Below the pieces are notes generated by a model, which was given only the letters and a program-made list of their open reading frames with translations, was not told where the DNA came from and did not search any database. A stretch of DNA of 64,000 nt from Macrostomum lignano. Lineage: Eukaryota. Both the position numbers and the translations under genes were made by a program. Shown piece after piece: positions 52,877-57,862 of the stretch. Location: contig NIVC01001546.1 in the NCBI GenBank assembly GCA_002269645.1, forward strand, positions 186,001 through 250,000. The letters run 5' to 3'. Each line of letters starts with the position of its first letter. Positions within the stretch are counted from its first letter, which is position 1.

Positions 52877-53714
52877 TTATCTCCGCCGTTTGTGAGCCGC
52901 CGGAACGCCGTAGCCGCCGCCCCCGCCGTGACCGTTTGGTCGGTCCCGGTGCCGCCGCTTCCCCCGATGCTGCTGCACGCCGCGAGAGTCTCTCTGGCCG
53001 CCGCCGCCGCCGCCGCCGCCATCGCGTCGTCGATGCCGCCGGCGTCGATCGCGGGAGAACGACCTCGACCTAGATCGCGTTCGCGACCTTGACCTTGAAC
53101 GCGACCTCGACCTCGATCGGCTATTCTCGTCAGCTTCGTCATCATAGGAGCTGCCAGCAGCTGCAGCGCCAGCGTCATTGTCGTCGGAGTCAGCGCCGCC
53201 ATTTTCGTCGTCTCCGCGGTGTCGATTTCGTCGAGAATTTTTCAACATCGACGAAGACTTTTTCGACGAAGATTTGTGCTGCTGTCGGGGAGAAAACTCG
53301 GATCGTTTCTGCGACTTGGAGTCGGCGCCGGCAGTAGATGATGAAGCAGCAACTGCCGGTGAGCTGACTCCAACAGGCGTGCCGGATGCGGAATCTGGGC
53401 CGCTAAGCTGCTGCTGTTGGCCGCTGGCGGCTCCGGCAGACTTGGCGGCAGCTTTCGCTCGGTCCATGCCTTTCTTAGCCTCGACTACAGCGGCCTCAGC
53501 TGCCGACCAGTCAATGGGCGGCCTGGCGTACAGATTCAACAGCGTGTGACAAATCTCCACAGACTGTTCGTAGGAGCAGTCCAACAGCTCCATCCAATCG
53601 TCTGGCAGCGGCACGCGCAGCTTCCTAGCCGATAACAGGATGCAGCCGCAGGCGACTTGCTCGGGACTGTATTGGCAGAACACGTGCGTTCGGAAACTGT
53701 CGTTCATGTAGTTC
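52877..53714 (-). CDS. CCNL1: Cyclin L, exon 4 (second cyclin-box half plus RS domain, terminal)
   Basis: Acceptor cattcgcag|G AAC TAC ATG; TG+G gives Trp. Encodes NYMNDSFRTHVFCQYSPEQVACGCILLSARKLRVPLPDDW...RSRSRSRSRSRTRSRSRSFSRDRRRRH...HKRRR*. Confidence 0.96.
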
Positions 53715-55064
53715 CTGCGAATGCGGACGAGAAGTTCCAATAAAATATTAAAAGGCACCGTAGAAGCAGGAATTCAAGAAATTAATTAGGAAACTTACCA
53801 AGGCAATGGATTGATATGCAAATTAGATAACCACTAGAGTCTATATTTATAAACCTGCTTCAATGTAAGCCAAATACAGTAGTGACAGATGGCTTCTACT
53901 GTTATAATTCAATAAATAGAAATGAACATACTGATAATTATAATAAATATTTTGCATTGCTACACTTGAAGGGCTGTCATCATCATATTAGAATTGATTC
54001 AAATTTCAACAAATGGTTTTACATCAATAAGCCAAGTTAGAAAACAAAAGTAAAAGAAAAAAAAACAATTAAACCTGGAATTTCTGACTGTTTGGTTTTT
54101 CTAGTAAACTAAAACACTTTAGTAGCCATTTTGTGAGCCACTGAACTTGTATATTTATTGGCAAATTGTGGTTCAATGAACAAATTTAGATTTCTAAATA
54201 ACAAAAACCATGATACGCTTAAAGATTAGGTAACCTTATTATACTGTTAACTAGTCTTAGTAGTATGGACCCGATAAAAATGGTACCTAGGCCAAGAAGC
54301 GTTCTTAGAGTCACTTAATTGCGTCGCCCCCAGGTAACACAGGTAAAACAGGAAGGGACTCTAGATGACGATTTTGCAACTCACGTGATCAGCGCTAGCG
54401 ACTCCATCGCAATCACAAGTCACCAGGAAGTTGTTCGCCAATGACTATTTAGCAATTTTGGTCACGGTAACGTTTTCAAACGGGCAAAACTTAAACCTAT
54501 TTATTTCTATGGTATATAAAGCCATAAATATTCTCTCTTTTACTCGTAAAGTTCATAATATAAATAATGTCAAAGACAAACTTAACAACAGTTGTCCAGG
54601 TGGTCCAGCACGCTTTAGACTACGGTGTGTGTTGATCTCCATTAAACCGCCTTCTGCTGCAACAAGAAAATCACCGCGCAATCAAGTGCCGCGACTGCCC
54701 TGATAAAGATATTGTATAAATCTGCTGAAAATCTTAATGCACAATATAAATCAACACGACAGGCGTAGAAGTAATAAATAAGTCACGTGTCTCGTTGTCC
54801 ATCATCAACTCGGGTGACCGTAGGGATGGTGCATTGCACAGCAGTCCGCGAGTATCACTTGTCTCTGATCTGTGTCAGGAATGCATTGCAAGCCCGGTGT
54901 TATTTAATCAAATCTTCTGACAAACGATACAAAGGCCTATAAACCGTTCGGACAGGCAGACAGGCAGTACTGCTGTTTGACAAACCTCTGACGACAAGAC
55001 TCTCGGAATTATCCTGGCTCGCTACCCTCCGTGGGTAATTAATTAACCTCTGGTGTACTTATTT

Positions 55065-55590
55065 AGGGCGCTGACTAACCAGGTGTACTTAATTAGGCCG
55101 CTGGCTTACATCAGGTATACCTAATTAGACCGCTGGTTTACCTCAGGTGTACTTGATTAGGCCGCTAGCTAACCTCAGGTGTACTTTATTGGGCCGCTGG
55201 CTTTAGTGGCTTACCTGAGGTGTACTTAATTAGGCCGCTAGCTAACCTCAGGTGTACTTAATTAGGCCGCCGGCTAATCACAGGTGTACTTAATTTGTCC
55301 GCTGGCTAATCACAGGTGTACTTAATTTGTCCGCTGGCTTACCTCAGGTGTTACCTAATTAGGCCGCTGGCTAACCTCAGGTGTACTTGATTAGGCCGCT
55401 GGCTAACCTCAGGTAAACCTAATTAGACCGCTGTTTCACCTCAGGTGTAGTTGGCCGCTGGCTAACCACAGGTGTACTTAATTAGGCCGCCGGCTAACCT
55501 CAGGTGTACCTAATTAGGCCGCTGGCTGACAACAGGTGTACCTAATTAGGCCGCTGGCTAACCACAGGTGTGCCTAATTAGGCCACTGGC
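55065..55590. repeat. Degenerate 32-bp minisatellite (TAACCTCAGGTGTACTTAATTAGGCCGCTGGC) in cyclin L intron 3
   Basis: About 16 units visible. Confidence 0.92.
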
Positions 55591-55841
55591 TAACATTCTG
55601 GGCACCCACAGATCCCGGTTGGATACCAACTAATCTTACGGCCATCAAGCAGAACTCAAGCACACAAATGAAGGCTGGTTAATAAAAAAATTGAACAGTA
55701 AAATGATATAAGGATACGGCTAACCAACCAACCAACCAATCGGACCGCAACGCAAACGCCACGCCACGGCTGAGCGAGCTTCATTTGGTAGCGACCGATC
55801 AGATGACTGACTGACTGACAGATGCTGCTGCGGCCGCTGAC

Positions 55842-55897
55842 CTCACTCGCTGCTGCAGGCTGAGCAGTGCTCTCATTGGCTTAGAGATCGCATAGAT
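55842..55897 (-). other. Candidate poison exon / cryptic acceptor in cyclin L intron 3
   Basis: Branch point CTAAC at 55971-55967, long polypyrimidine tract, first AG at 55899-55898. Exon 3 TG plus the first base A gives TGA. The donor is uncertain (55846 or 55841, or further downstream). Confidence 0.55.
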
Positions 55898-56228
55898 CTG
55901 AGCCGAGGATTGAGTAGTATCGAAGTGGGAGGGGGAGAAAGAGAAAGGCAAAAGGGGGAGAGTACGGTTAGAATTATGCTCGACAACTGCATTTATATTG
56001 ATTATTCTTCAAGCGGCTTGCGTTTGCAGTTATAAAAAATGTTATTTGATCTTCTAGAGACTTCCAGCTTCTTACATTTTAGAGATCGACAGTGTATCTA
56101 CTAAAGTGATGTACAGCCAGCCCTTCAAGATGTAGCAAAAATAACAAAATAATGAACGTAGTAATAAAACGCTGAAATTGTTTCTTCGAATTTCTTCGAA
56201 TGTCATTTTAGCTGTCTGTGGGGCAGTC

Positions 56229-57690
56229 GCTTCAGGGCTCTTACTGATTGTGACTTCAGGGCTCTTACTGTTGGTCACTTCAGGGTTCTTACAGGCTGTC
56301 CTTCAGGGTTCTTACAGGCTGTCTTTCAGGTTCTTACTGGTTGTCACTTCAGGGTTCTTACTGGCTGTCCTTCAGGGTTCTTACTGGCTGTCTTTCAGGT
56401 TCTTACTGGTTGTCACTTCAGGGTTCTTACTGGTTGTCACTTCAGGGTTCTTACTGGTTGTCACTTCAGGGTTCTTACTGATTGTCACTTCAGGGTTCTT
56501 ACTGGTTGTCACCTCAGGGTTCTTACAGGCTGTCCTTCAGGGTTCTTACTGGCTGTCTTTCAGGTTCTTACTGGTTGTCACTTCAGGGTTCTTACTGTTC
56601 GTCACTTCAGGGTTCTTACAGGCTGTCCTTCAGGATTCTTACTGGTTGTCACTTCAGGGTTCTTACTGGCTGTTCTTCAGGGTTCGTACTGTTGGTCACT
56701 TCAGGGTTCTTACAGTCTGTCCTTCAGGGTTCTTACAGGCTGTCCTTCAGGGTTCTTACAGGCTGTCCTTCAGGGTTCTTACTGGTTGTCACTTCGGGCT
56801 TCTTACTGGCTGTCCTTCAGGGTTCTTACTGGCTGTCACTTAGGGGTTCTTACTGGTTGTCACTTTGGGGTTCTTATTGGTTGTCACTTTGGGGTTCTTA
56901 CAGGCTGTCACTTCAGGGTTCTTACAGGCTGTCCTTCAGGGTTCTTACTGGCTGTCACTTCAGGGTTCTTACTGTTGGTCACTTCAGGGTTCTTACAGTC
57001 TGTCCTTCAGGGTTCTTACAGGCTGTACTTCAGGGTTCTTACAGGCTGTCCTTCAGGGTTCTTACAGGCTGTCACTTCAGGGTTCTTACAGACTACTTCA
57101 GGGTTCTGACAGGCTGAACTTCGGGGTTCTTACAGGCTATACTTCAGGGTTCTTACTAGCTGTCACTTTAGGGTTCTTACAGGCTGTACTTCAGGGTTCT
57201 GACAGGCTGTACTTCAGGGTTCTTACTGGCTGTCACTTCAGGGTTCTTACAGGCTGTACTTCAGGGTTCTGACAGGCTGTACTTCAGGGTTCTTACTGGC
57301 TGTCACTTCAGGGTTCTTACAGGCTGTCCTTCAGGGTTCTTACAGGCTGTCCTTCAGGGTTCTTACAGGCTGTCCTTCAGGGTTCTTACAGGCTGTACTT
57401 CAGGGTTCTTACAGGCTGTCCTTCAGGGTTCTTACAGGCTGTCCTTCAGGGTTCTTACTGTTGGTCTCTTTAGGGTTCTTACAGTCTGTCCTTCAGGGTT
57501 CTTGCAGGCTGTCCTTCAGGGTTCTTGCAGGCTGTCCTTCAGGGTTCTTACTGGCTGTCACTTCAGGGTTCTTGCAGGCTGTCCTTCAGGGTTCTTACAG
57601 CCTGTCCTTCAGGGTTCTTCCAGGTTGTCCTTCAGGGTTCTTACAGGCTGTCCTTCAGGGTTCTTACTGGCTGCCACTTCAGGTTCTTTA
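56229..57690. repeat. 23/24-bp minisatellite (CTTCAGGGTTCTTACAGGCTGTC / CTTCAGGGTTCTTACTGGTTGTCA) in cyclin L intron 3
   Basis: About 60 units visible. Confidence 0.96.
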
Positions 57691-57797
57691 CGGGTTGCAA
57701 CCTTTGAATTTAGGCTAAACTAATCTCAGGTATATGGAACATTAAATTCTAAACCTCGCAGAGGAGAAAAGCAAACAAAAAACAAAGACTAACTTAC

Positions 57798-57862
57798 CAG
57801 GCAGATTGTCTCAATTGCTGGTTGTCATCCAGCTGTAGCCAGTTCAGCCAAACTGGGATCAG
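57798..57862 (-). CDS. CCNL1: Cyclin L, exon 3 (65 nt)
   Basis: Acceptor aaaaatttcag|CTG; LIPVWLNWLQLDDNQQLRQSA-TG; donor gtaagt. Aligns with the cyclin L segment IIVMYLQVL...NQxLVQTAW. Confidence 0.92.

What the first reader, a model, noticed from the sequence alone, without database searches (positions are those of the whole stretch)
55842..55975. Poison exon in cyclin L whose inclusion creates a stop codon exactly at the splice junction
Deep in intron 3 is a textbook 3' splice site: CTAAC branch point, the tract ctctcccccttttgcctttctctttctccccctcccacttc, an ~70-nt AG-free zone, then ctcag|ATCTATG. Exon 3 ends in phase 2 with TG. The normal exon 4 supplies G (TGG, Trp), while this acceptor supplies A (TGA), ending the protein at 251 aa with no RS domain and a probable NMD target. 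As I recall, human CCNL1/CCNL2 short isoforms diverge right after the equivalent ...QTAW/QTSW, so this would be the same regulatory switch built from different sequence in a distant phylum.
Basis: partly seen in the sequence, partly recalled or inferred. Interest (0 to 1): 0.74.

Follow-up and report, generated by a model that had tools for sequence, protein, structure and literature searches.

The report
Unproven poison-exon candidate in flatworm cyclin L
Inside the last intron of the cyclin L gene of the flatworm Macrostomum lignano there really is a good-looking splice acceptor that would end the protein at the junction, but no available data show it is ever used, and sites like it turn up by chance fairly often in this repeat-rich DNA.

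Summary
The window is Macrostomum lignano (assembly Mlig_3_7, contig NIVC01001546.1). Its cyclin L gene is on the minus strand with 4 coding exons.

- CTAAC at 55971-55967.
- A 41-nt tract, 39/41 pyrimidine, at 55962-55922.
- A 79-nt AG-free zone.
- CAG|A with first exon base 55897.
- Exon 3 ends ..TG, so TG+A gives TGA.

GTRAG donor motifs follow 51 and 258 nt downstream.

The interpretation, a regulated poison exon, could not be tested:
- No transcript data were reachable.
- The three other genomic copies are at least 99% identical across introns and exons alike, so they carry no conservation signal.

Comparable acceptor-like sites occur at 0.04-0.46 per kb in this window. About 0.1-0.6 are therefore expected in this intron by chance, and A at +1 is roughly a 1-in-4 event. 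The surroundings are a patchwork of simple repeats.

In its favour:
- It is the best acceptor-like site in the intron.
- It has the same distal-branch-point layout as two of the gene's three real acceptors.
- The intron position and phase are conserved in clam, fish and lizard.
- Vertebrate CCNL1 and CCNL2 share an exon-like conserved block in that same intron.

Verdict: accurate observation, plausible but unproven function, about 30% likely real.

The parts
57798..57862 (-). Cyclin L coding exon 3 (LIPVWLNWLQLDDNQQLRQSA + TG of the Trp codon); donor TG|GTAAGT
   Evidence: same exon end and phase in lizard, clam, tarpon and catfish
53715..57797 (-). Intron 3 (4083 nt), the last and longest intron. 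It contains two minisatellite arrays (57688-56222, 23-bp unit; 55594-55044, 32-bp unit) and a 627-bp unique island (56221-55595) that holds the candidate.
55967..55971 (-). CTAAC, putative branch point; branch A is 71 nt upstream of the first exon base
   Evidence: The real acceptors of introns 2 and 3 have CTAAC/CTAAT at 55 and 72 nt.
55922..55962 (-). 41-nt CT-rich tract, 39/41 pyrimidine. In the three other genomic copies its two C-runs are one C longer.
55898..55899 (-). Candidate acceptor AG (ctcAG|A), preceded by a 79-nt AG-free zone
55847..55897 (-). Candidate 51-nt cassette exon if the GTGAGG donor (GT at 55846-55845) is used. Its first base A completes TGA. Alternative 3' ends: 55842 (GAG|GTCAGC, 56 nt) or 55640 (GCC|GTAAGA, 258 nt).
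   Evidence: donor motif GT[G/A]AG for M. lignano from PMC8629364. No transcript evidence.
55720..55897 (-). Patch of 52-60% GC directly downstream of the acceptor, built from micro-repeats: CAG-rich, (GTCA)4 at 55819-55804, GCGTG repeats, (GGTT)4.5 at 55739-55722
52877..53714 (-). Cyclin L exon 4 (G of Trp, then NYMNDS...; second cyclin fold and RS domain, through the stop codon)

Best explanation
The feature is a real, well-formed 3' splice-site-like motif: CTAAC, a CT-rich tract, a long AG-free zone and CAG. It lies in the unique island between two minisatellite arrays in the last intron of M. lignano cyclin L.

Most likely it is a silent or only sporadically used pseudo-acceptor. One of the CT-rich low-complexity tracts that are common on this strand probably created it, rather than selection for a regulatory exon.

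The same truncation, ...QSAW-TAA, arises by default whenever this phase-2 GTAAGT intron is simply not removed. That is a generic property of the conserved intron, not of the candidate exon.

Shown: the motif, the reading frame, and the conserved intron position. Inferred: that the site is not under selection.
For: - CT-rich tracts of at least 37/41 pyrimidine occur 7 times on this strand in 64 kb, so about 0.45 are expected in a 4.08-kb intron.
- Ten equally good acceptor-like sites occur in 128 kb, most of them trailing simple repeats.
- Composite sites that also have a branch motif occur at 0.04-0.46 per kb.
- 39% of the window is tandem repeat.
- Intron 3 alone carries 62 GTRAG donor motifs, 56 of them inside arrays, so consensus matches are abundant here without implying use.
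- The sequence after the acceptor is a chain of micro-repeats, not complex sequence.
- It shows no excess RNA structure and no Rfam or tRNA hit.
- The gene call on record covers this locus with a single 535-aa product, and no nested gene is called.
- Exact look-ups of the truncated products and of the small ORFs in the island found nothing.
- Retention of the intron gives an immediate stop in flatworm, clam, lizard and tarpon alike.
Against: - It is the best of 117 AG sites in the unique part of the intron.
- Its unusual layout, a branch motif about 70 nt upstream with an AG-free zone of about 80 nt, is the same as at the gene's genuine intron-2 and intron-3 acceptors: 55 and 72 nt, with zones of 107 and 77 nt.
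- A GTGAG donor follows after 51 nt.
- GC rises to exon-like values right after the acceptor.
- At least 2 of the 8 CTAAC-type composite sites on this strand are real acceptors.
- Vertebrate CCNL1 and CCNL2 carry a conserved exon-like block, also preceded by C/T runs, in the homologous intron.
- M. lignano lost 7 of about 10 ancestral introns but kept this one.
- Absence from the protein collection says little, because the full-length protein is absent from it too.
Confidence: 0.5

Rival explanations
1. It is a genuine alternative (poison) cassette exon. Regulated use of the 55897 acceptor with the 55846 donor (or 55841/55639) inserts an exon whose first base creates TGA. That would yield an NMD-sensitive mRNA and/or a 257-aa cyclin L lacking the second cyclin fold and the RS domain. 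It would be a flatworm counterpart, built from unrelated sequence, of the vertebrate CCNL1/CCNL2 short-isoform switch in the same intron.
For: - It is the best acceptor-like site in the intron and shares its architecture with the real acceptors.
- A GTGAG donor lies 51 nt downstream, matching the species' donor motif.
- The patch after the acceptor is GC-rich.
- Intron position and phase are conserved across Bilateria.
- Lizard CCNL2 and catfish CCNL1 share a 69-nt intronic block (77% identity, E 2e-6) ending in G|GTAAGT in this intron.
- The literature describes RS-less cyclin L isoforms, and a review reports regulated retention of what it calls intron 6 of rat Ania-6/cyclin L1; that this is the intron after the Trp codon was not established here (PMC3246316; PMC11734941).
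Against: - There is no transcript evidence of any kind.
- No conservation test was possible.
- The motif statistics are compatible with chance.
- With the 51-nt exon, the stop lies only 50 nt upstream of the last exon junction, which is borderline for EJC-type NMD.
- There is no sequence similarity to the vertebrate or clam introns.
- The exon body is simple-repeat sequence.
Confidence: 0.3
2. The regulatory switch at this intron, if any exists in the flatworm, is plain intron retention or detention, not a cassette exon. The phase-2 TG|GTAAGT donor makes any unspliced transcript read TGG TAA, giving a 258-aa RS-less protein. Because this is the last intron, no downstream exon junction would mark the transcript for decay. 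The CT tract and acceptor would be irrelevant.
For: - Read-through gives an immediate stop in M. lignano, clam, lizard (TAA) and tarpon (TGA).
- A review states that intron 6 of rat Ania-6/cyclin L1 is retained in a stimulus-dependent way (PMC3246316).
- The intron is the last one in the M. lignano gene.
Against: - An immediate stop is a generic consequence of any phase-2 GTRAGT donor, so it is not evidence of regulation.
- No retention data exist for this species.
- A 4-kb, repeat-filled retained intron would make an unusual mRNA.
- Whether 'intron 6' of the rat gene is the intron after the Trp codon was not established here.
Confidence: 0.1
3. The acceptor belongs to some other transcript. 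Examples are an SL trans-spliced or internally initiated RNA starting in the island, an alternative terminal exon, or an unannotated non-coding exon.
For: - About 20-30% of Macrostomum genes are SL trans-spliced.
- A GC-rich patch follows the acceptor.
- AATAAA or ATTAAA signals occur further down the intron at 55190, 54908, 54505 and 54159.
Against: - The last six bases, GCTCAG, do not fit the trans-splice acceptor motif [T/C]TNCAG.
- An upstream cis donor is available, which favours cis-splicing.
- There is no ORF above 50 aa in the island.
- No nested gene is called.
- The nearest poly(A) signal is 700 nt away, inside a tandem array.
- Joining the SL's terminal ATG to the 51-nt exon and then exon 4 is out of frame with cyclin L (reading of the sequence).
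Confidence: 0.1

Closest known systems
Vertebrate cyclin L1/L2 short (beta) isoforms and the conserved exon-like element in the intron after ...QTAW/QTSW
   Same: The gene is the same and so is the intron: position and phase 2 inside the Trp codon. An exon-like element with upstream C/T runs and a strong donor lies in that intron in lizard CCNL2 and catfish CCNL1. The predicted product lacks the RS domain, like the described beta isoforms (PMC11734941, PMC2361229).
   Different: There is no sequence similarity. The vertebrate element is conserved between paralogs across fish and reptile, whereas the flatworm candidate has no conservation evidence. Which acceptor vertebrates use, and where exactly the human short isoforms diverge, was not established here. 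My recollection of 232 aa for L1-beta and 226 aa for L2-beta is memory only.
Poison (NMD) cassette exons of splicing regulators such as SR proteins and hnRNPs
   Same: The gene encodes a splicing-regulatory protein with an RS domain. The candidate is a short cassette with an in-frame stop, giving potential for negative feedback.
   Different: Known cases are defined by transcript evidence, NMD sensitivity and usually strong conservation. None of these could be shown here.
Pseudo-exons / decoy splice sites in long introns
   Same: Consensus-matching acceptor and donor lie a short distance apart, deep in a long repeat-rich intron. They are embedded in low-complexity sequence and there is no evidence of use.
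   Different: It ranks first among the acceptor-like sites of the intron and copies the distal-branch-point architecture of the gene's real acceptors, which most decoys would not.
Retained or detained intron of rat Ania-6 (cyclin L1)
   Same: It also produces a truncated, RS-less cyclin L from the middle of the gene. Read-through of the flatworm donor gives a stop immediately after Trp.
   Different: That mechanism needs no internal acceptor. Identity of the rat 'intron 6' with this intron is not verified.

Membership tests
Poison (NMD-inducing) cassette exon | Competent 3' splice site (branch point, pyrimidine tract, YAG) | tested here: met
   Met at motif level only. CTAAC, a 39/41-pyrimidine tract, a 79-nt AG-free zone and CAG are present. 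The layout is comparable to the real acceptors of the same gene.
Poison (NMD-inducing) cassette exon | Competent 5' splice site at a plausible exon length downstream | tested here: met
   Met at motif level only. GTGAGG follows at 51 nt and GTAAGA at 258 nt. However, GTRAG occurs 62 times in this intron.
Poison (NMD-inducing) cassette exon | Inclusion introduces a premature in-frame stop | tested here: met
   TG+A gives TGA at the junction, and the product is 257 aa from the first ATG.
Poison (NMD-inducing) cassette exon | Stop at least 50-55 nt upstream of a downstream exon junction (EJC rule) | tested here: inconclusive
   The distance is 50 nt for the 51-nt exon, 55 nt for the 56-nt version and 257 nt for the 258-nt version. 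Whether flatworm NMD follows the EJC rule is unknown.
Poison (NMD-inducing) cassette exon | Exon observed in transcripts, at a level that rises when NMD is blocked | not testable with these tools
   No M. lignano RNA data were reachable. Spliced proteins cannot be looked up, exact look-ups were negative for all isoforms including the full-length protein, and the metagenome scan found nothing.
Poison (NMD-inducing) cassette exon | Conservation of exon and splice sites above the intron background | tested here: inconclusive
   The three other copies in the assembly are 99.7% identical over the island, but equally so over all other intron sequence from 59326 to 52877. No other Macrostomum genome is available here.
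Orthologue of the vertebrate CCNL1/CCNL2 intronic alternative exon | Located in the homologous intron | tested here: met
   The position and phase are the same in lizard, tarpon, catfish and clam. The vertebrate conserved block lies in that intron.
Orthologue of the vertebrate CCNL1/CCNL2 intronic alternative exon | Detectable sequence similarity to the vertebrate element | tested here: not met
   There was no significant match between the M. lignano intron and the lizard, catfish or clam introns.
SL trans-splice acceptor (M. lignano) | [T/C]TNCAG motif with no upstream cis donor | tested here: not met
   The sequence is GCTCAG, and an upstream cis donor exists at 57797 (motif from PMC8629364; sequence).

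The most novel reading that the evidence does not exclude
The intron that splits the Trp codon after the first cyclin fold is an ancient bilaterian control point of cyclin L. Different lineages have installed unrelated poison exons in it: a conserved element in vertebrate CCNL1/CCNL2 and the 55897 exon in Macrostomum. In each case the spliceosome-activating CDK11 cofactor would throttle its own production or switch to an RS-less form. This would also explain why the flatworm kept this intron while losing seven others.
Probability: 0.2. Interest if true: 0.55.

Novelty: new member of a known kind. Interest (0 to 1): 0.3.

Why it matters
Cyclin L is the activating partner of CDK11, the kinase that phosphorylates SF3B1 during spliceosome activation. 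If the exon is real, it would show that negative feedback by unproductive splicing of cyclin L exists outside vertebrates and sits at the same intron, built from unrelated sequence. That would be another example of the evolutionary flexibility of splicing-factor autoregulation, in a species where RNAi by soaking makes it easy to test. If it is not real, it illustrates that vertebrate-style 'textbook' splice motifs are poor predictors in a genome that is 39% tandem repeat locally and full of consensus matches.

Tried and rejected
- **Rfam, tRNA and RNA-fold scans.** The intron and island gave no hit, and fold z-scores were +0.4 and +0.5. A structured RNA is rejected.
- **Repeat family or transposon.** The island and the rest of the intron have no second copy in the window.
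- **Nested gene.** There are no ORFs above 50 aa in the island outside the array-derived ones, and no gene is called there.
- **Conservation among the four assembly copies.** This was uninformative. The copies are near-identical throughout the gene body, and the mismatches of copy L008 cluster 3' of 54900 as a block boundary, not as constraint.
- **Transcript evidence.** Exact look-up of 10 isoform and ORF sequences found none, full-length included. A scan of metagenome contigs with the end of exon 3 found nothing.
- **Homologue search.** The best hit was only 58% identical, with no Macrostomum or other close relative, so no cross-species intron was available.
- **Vertebrate short isoforms.** Ten hypothetical ...QTA and ...QTAW products from five species are not in the collection. 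Several vertebrate isoform look-ups were not on record. The primary papers on cyclin L isoforms (Loyer 2008) and poison exons (Thomas 2020) are not held.
- **Weak clam-vertebrate intron matches.** On inspection these were chance matches.
- **Recursive splice site.** Rejected, because the junction CTG|ATCTAT does not regenerate a donor.
- **Bacterial promoter/terminator scan.** At background level and irrelevant for a eukaryote.

Full report
**Source and gene model**

An intronless LSm6 gene in the window (51351-51109, minus strand) matches four contigs of GCA_002269645.1 exactly. One of them, NIVC01001546.1, is 100% identical to window 61351-41109. That accession is the Macrostomum lignano Mlig_3_7 assembly (PMC5730564).

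Cyclin L lies on the minus strand with four coding exons:

| Exon | Window coordinates |
|---|---|
| E1 | 60798-60212 |
| E2 | 59291-59171 |
| E3 | 57862-57798 |
| E4 | 53714-52877 |

The product is 536 aa from the first ATG. Its closest database relatives are only 58% identical: cyclin L1/L2 of molluscs, priapulids and vertebrates. The gene call on record spans the same start and stop, begins at codon 2, and has 535 aa.

**The observation**

- E3 ends GCC TG|gtaagt, phase 2.
- E4 begins with G, completing TGG (Trp).
- In intron 3, CTAAC lies at 55971-55967.
- The quoted 41-nt tract lies at 55962-55922 and is 39/41 pyrimidine.
- No AG occurs for 79 nt.
- Then comes ctcag|ATCTATG, with first exon base 55897. 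Joining 57798 to 55897 reads GCC TGA.

The truncated product is 257 aa from the first ATG.

Downstream, GTRAG donor motifs occur after 51 nt (GCGA|GTGAGG) and 258 nt (GGCC|GTAAGA).

**Context in the intron**

Intron 3 (57797-53715, 4083 nt) is half minisatellite. A 23-bp array covers 57688-56222 and a 32-bp array covers 55594-55044. The candidate sits in the 627-bp unique island between them.

GC rises to 0.52-0.60 at 55700-55900, against 0.33-0.39 just upstream. This patch is a chain of micro-repeats: CAG-rich, (GTCA)4, GCGTG repeats and (GGTT)4.5.

Several alternative identities were checked and not supported:
- There is no Rfam family, tRNA or excess RNA structure.
- There is no second copy in the window.
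- There is no ORF of note and no nested gene call.

**Is it more than chance?**

- CT-rich tracts of at least 37/41 pyrimidine occur 7 times on this strand and once on the other.
- Sites with YAG, at least 12/17 proximal pyrimidines, at least 46/62 distal pyrimidines and an AG-free zone of at least 60 nt occur 10 times in 128 kb. Most trail simple repeats. That gives 0.3-0.6 expected in this intron.
- Requiring also a CTRAY or CTAAC motif inside the AG-free zone gives 0.04-0.46 sites per kb of non-repeat sequence.
- A at +1 is about a 0.29 event.
- Intron 3 contains 62 GTRAG motifs, 56 of them in the arrays. Consensus matches alone therefore mean little in this sequence.

Some points do favour a real acceptor.
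- It is the best of the 117 AGs in the unique parts of the intron. Only three pass even moderate criteria.
- Its odd layout matches real sites in the same gene. The genuine intron-2 and intron-3 acceptors have CTAAC/CTAAT at 55 and 72 nt with AG-free zones of 107 and 77 nt, against 71 and 79 nt for the candidate.
- Of the eight CTAAC-type composite sites on this strand, at least two are real acceptors: cyclin L exon 3 and an innexin-like exon.

**Conservation**

The only related DNA reachable is the three other copies in the same neopolyploid assembly. They are identical over the island except for one extra C in each of two C-runs of the tract. They are equally identical (99.1-100%) over all other unique intron and exon sequence from 59326 to 52877, whereas the flanks are 96-97% identical. 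The few mismatches of copy L008 cluster 3' of 54900. There is therefore no differential conservation signal.

No other Macrostomum sequence and no transcript data could be reached.

**The comparative claim**

This part could be partly tested. All three M. lignano introns are at ancestral positions and phases: REK[K/R] phase 2, HPHK phase 0 and Trp phase 2. The flatworm has lost the other seven or so introns seen in vertebrates.

The Trp intron is present with the same TG|G split in lizard CCNL2, tarpon CCNL2, catfish CCNL1 and the clam Mya arenaria. In all of them, reading through the GTRAGT donor gives TGG followed at once by TAA or TGA. An RS-less protein ending at Trp is therefore the default product of not splicing this intron, whatever lies inside it.

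Comparing the lizard CCNL2 and catfish CCNL1 loci at the DNA level recovers the coding exons plus a single non-coding block:
- It is 69 nt long, 77% identical, E = 2e-6.
- It lies inside this same intron in both species and ends in G|GTAAGT.
- It is preceded by C- and T-runs.

I take this to be the vertebrate alternative exon.

The acceptor used in vertebrates and the exact divergence point of the human short isoforms were not established. The papers held say only that alpha, beta and gamma isoforms exist, that alpha carries the RS domain, and that 'intron 6' of rat Ania-6 is retained in a regulated way. The M. lignano intron shows no similarity to the vertebrate or clam introns.

**Mechanism and likelihoods**

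What the sequence shows directly:
- If the 55897 acceptor is used, the protein ends after ...LRQSA.
- It then lacks the second cyclin fold, which SAP30BP encircles in the human complex (PMC13324802), and the RS domain.

What is inferred, for the 51-nt version of the exon:
- The stop would lie only 50 nt upstream of the last junction. That is borderline for EJC-type NMD, although the 3' UTR would be lengthened by more than 800 nt.

My estimates:

| Explanation | Probability |
|---|---|
| Silent or sporadic pseudo-acceptor created by low-complexity sequence | 0.5 |
| Genuine alternative (poison) exon | 0.3 |
| Intron retention is the relevant switch | 0.1 |
| The site belongs to another transcript | 0.1 |

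The last option is weakened because the site does not fit the SL trans-splice acceptor motif [T/C]TNCAG and has an upstream cis donor.

**Novelty and verdict**

If real, this is a new member of a known kind: an unproductive-splicing exon in a splicing regulator. It would be notable for sitting in the same ancestral intron as the vertebrate element while being unrelated in sequence.

As it stands, it is an accurate observation with a plausible but unproven interpretation. The decisive data are junction reads, with and without NMD, and the orthologous intron in M. cliftonense and M. hystrix. Both are easy to obtain but were outside these tools.

Noticed in passing
window 60083-59327, 58891-58173, 57688-56222, 55594-55044: Each cyclin L intron carries its own unrelated minisatellite (units of 25, 24, 23 and 32 bp; 17-63 copies). 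TRF masks 25.2 kb, 39% of the whole window. The 23-bp unit contains a GTAAGA donor-like motif, which gives 56 of the 62 GTRAG matches in intron 3.
   Followed up: partly
window 60798-52877 (-) versus L009, L011, L012: M. lignano cyclin L retains only three of about ten ancestral introns, all at conserved position and phase. They are three consecutive middle introns. The two 5' introns and all introns 3' of the Trp codon are gone.
   Followed up: partly
L009 10377-10443 and L012 5736-5803: A 69-nt non-coding block is conserved between lizard CCNL2 and catfish CCNL1. It lies inside the intron after the Trp codon, ends in G|GTAAGT and is preceded by C/T runs. The only AG shared by both species at its 5' edge (GGAG|A) would also give TG+A = TGA. 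Which acceptor is actually used was not established.
   Followed up: partly
window 57797, and the equivalent donors in L009, L010, L011: Because the conserved intron is phase 2 with a GTRAGT donor, read-through gives TGG followed at once by TAA or TGA in flatworm, clam, lizard and tarpon. Retention alone truncates cyclin L right after the first cyclin fold.
   Followed up: yes
window 59326-52877 versus L005, L006, L008: The cyclin L gene body, introns included, is 99.1-100% identical among the four assembly copies, whereas the upstream and downstream flanks are 96-97% identical. This suggests recent homogenisation or collapsed haplotypes in the neopolyploid genome.
   Followed up: partly
window 60795 (L007 557); L006 976; L008 861: The recorded gene calls for cyclin L start at codon 2 or 3, just after the ATG (5'-partial CDS). 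Neither the 535/536-aa product nor any isoform was found by exact look-up in the protein collection.
   Followed up: partly
window 51351-51109 (-): An intronless LSm6 gene (80 aa) lies 1.5 kb downstream of cyclin L on the same strand and is present in all four copies. In this trans-splicing species, a possible operon partner.
   Followed up: no
window 53798 (-): A perfect donor-like TTG|GTAAGT lies 84 nt upstream of the exon 4 acceptor, immediately before the CTAAT that is the likely branch point of intron 3.
   Followed up: no
window ~309 downstream (-): An innexin-like coding exon (…YYQWV motif) follows a CTAAC-type acceptor at the window edge. It was used only as a positive example of the acceptor architecture.
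   Followed up: no
window 20739-19891 (-): An 850-bp CT-rich array lies on the minus strand. CT-rich tracts are strongly strand-biased in the window: 7 on the minus strand, 1 on the plus strand.
   Followed up: no
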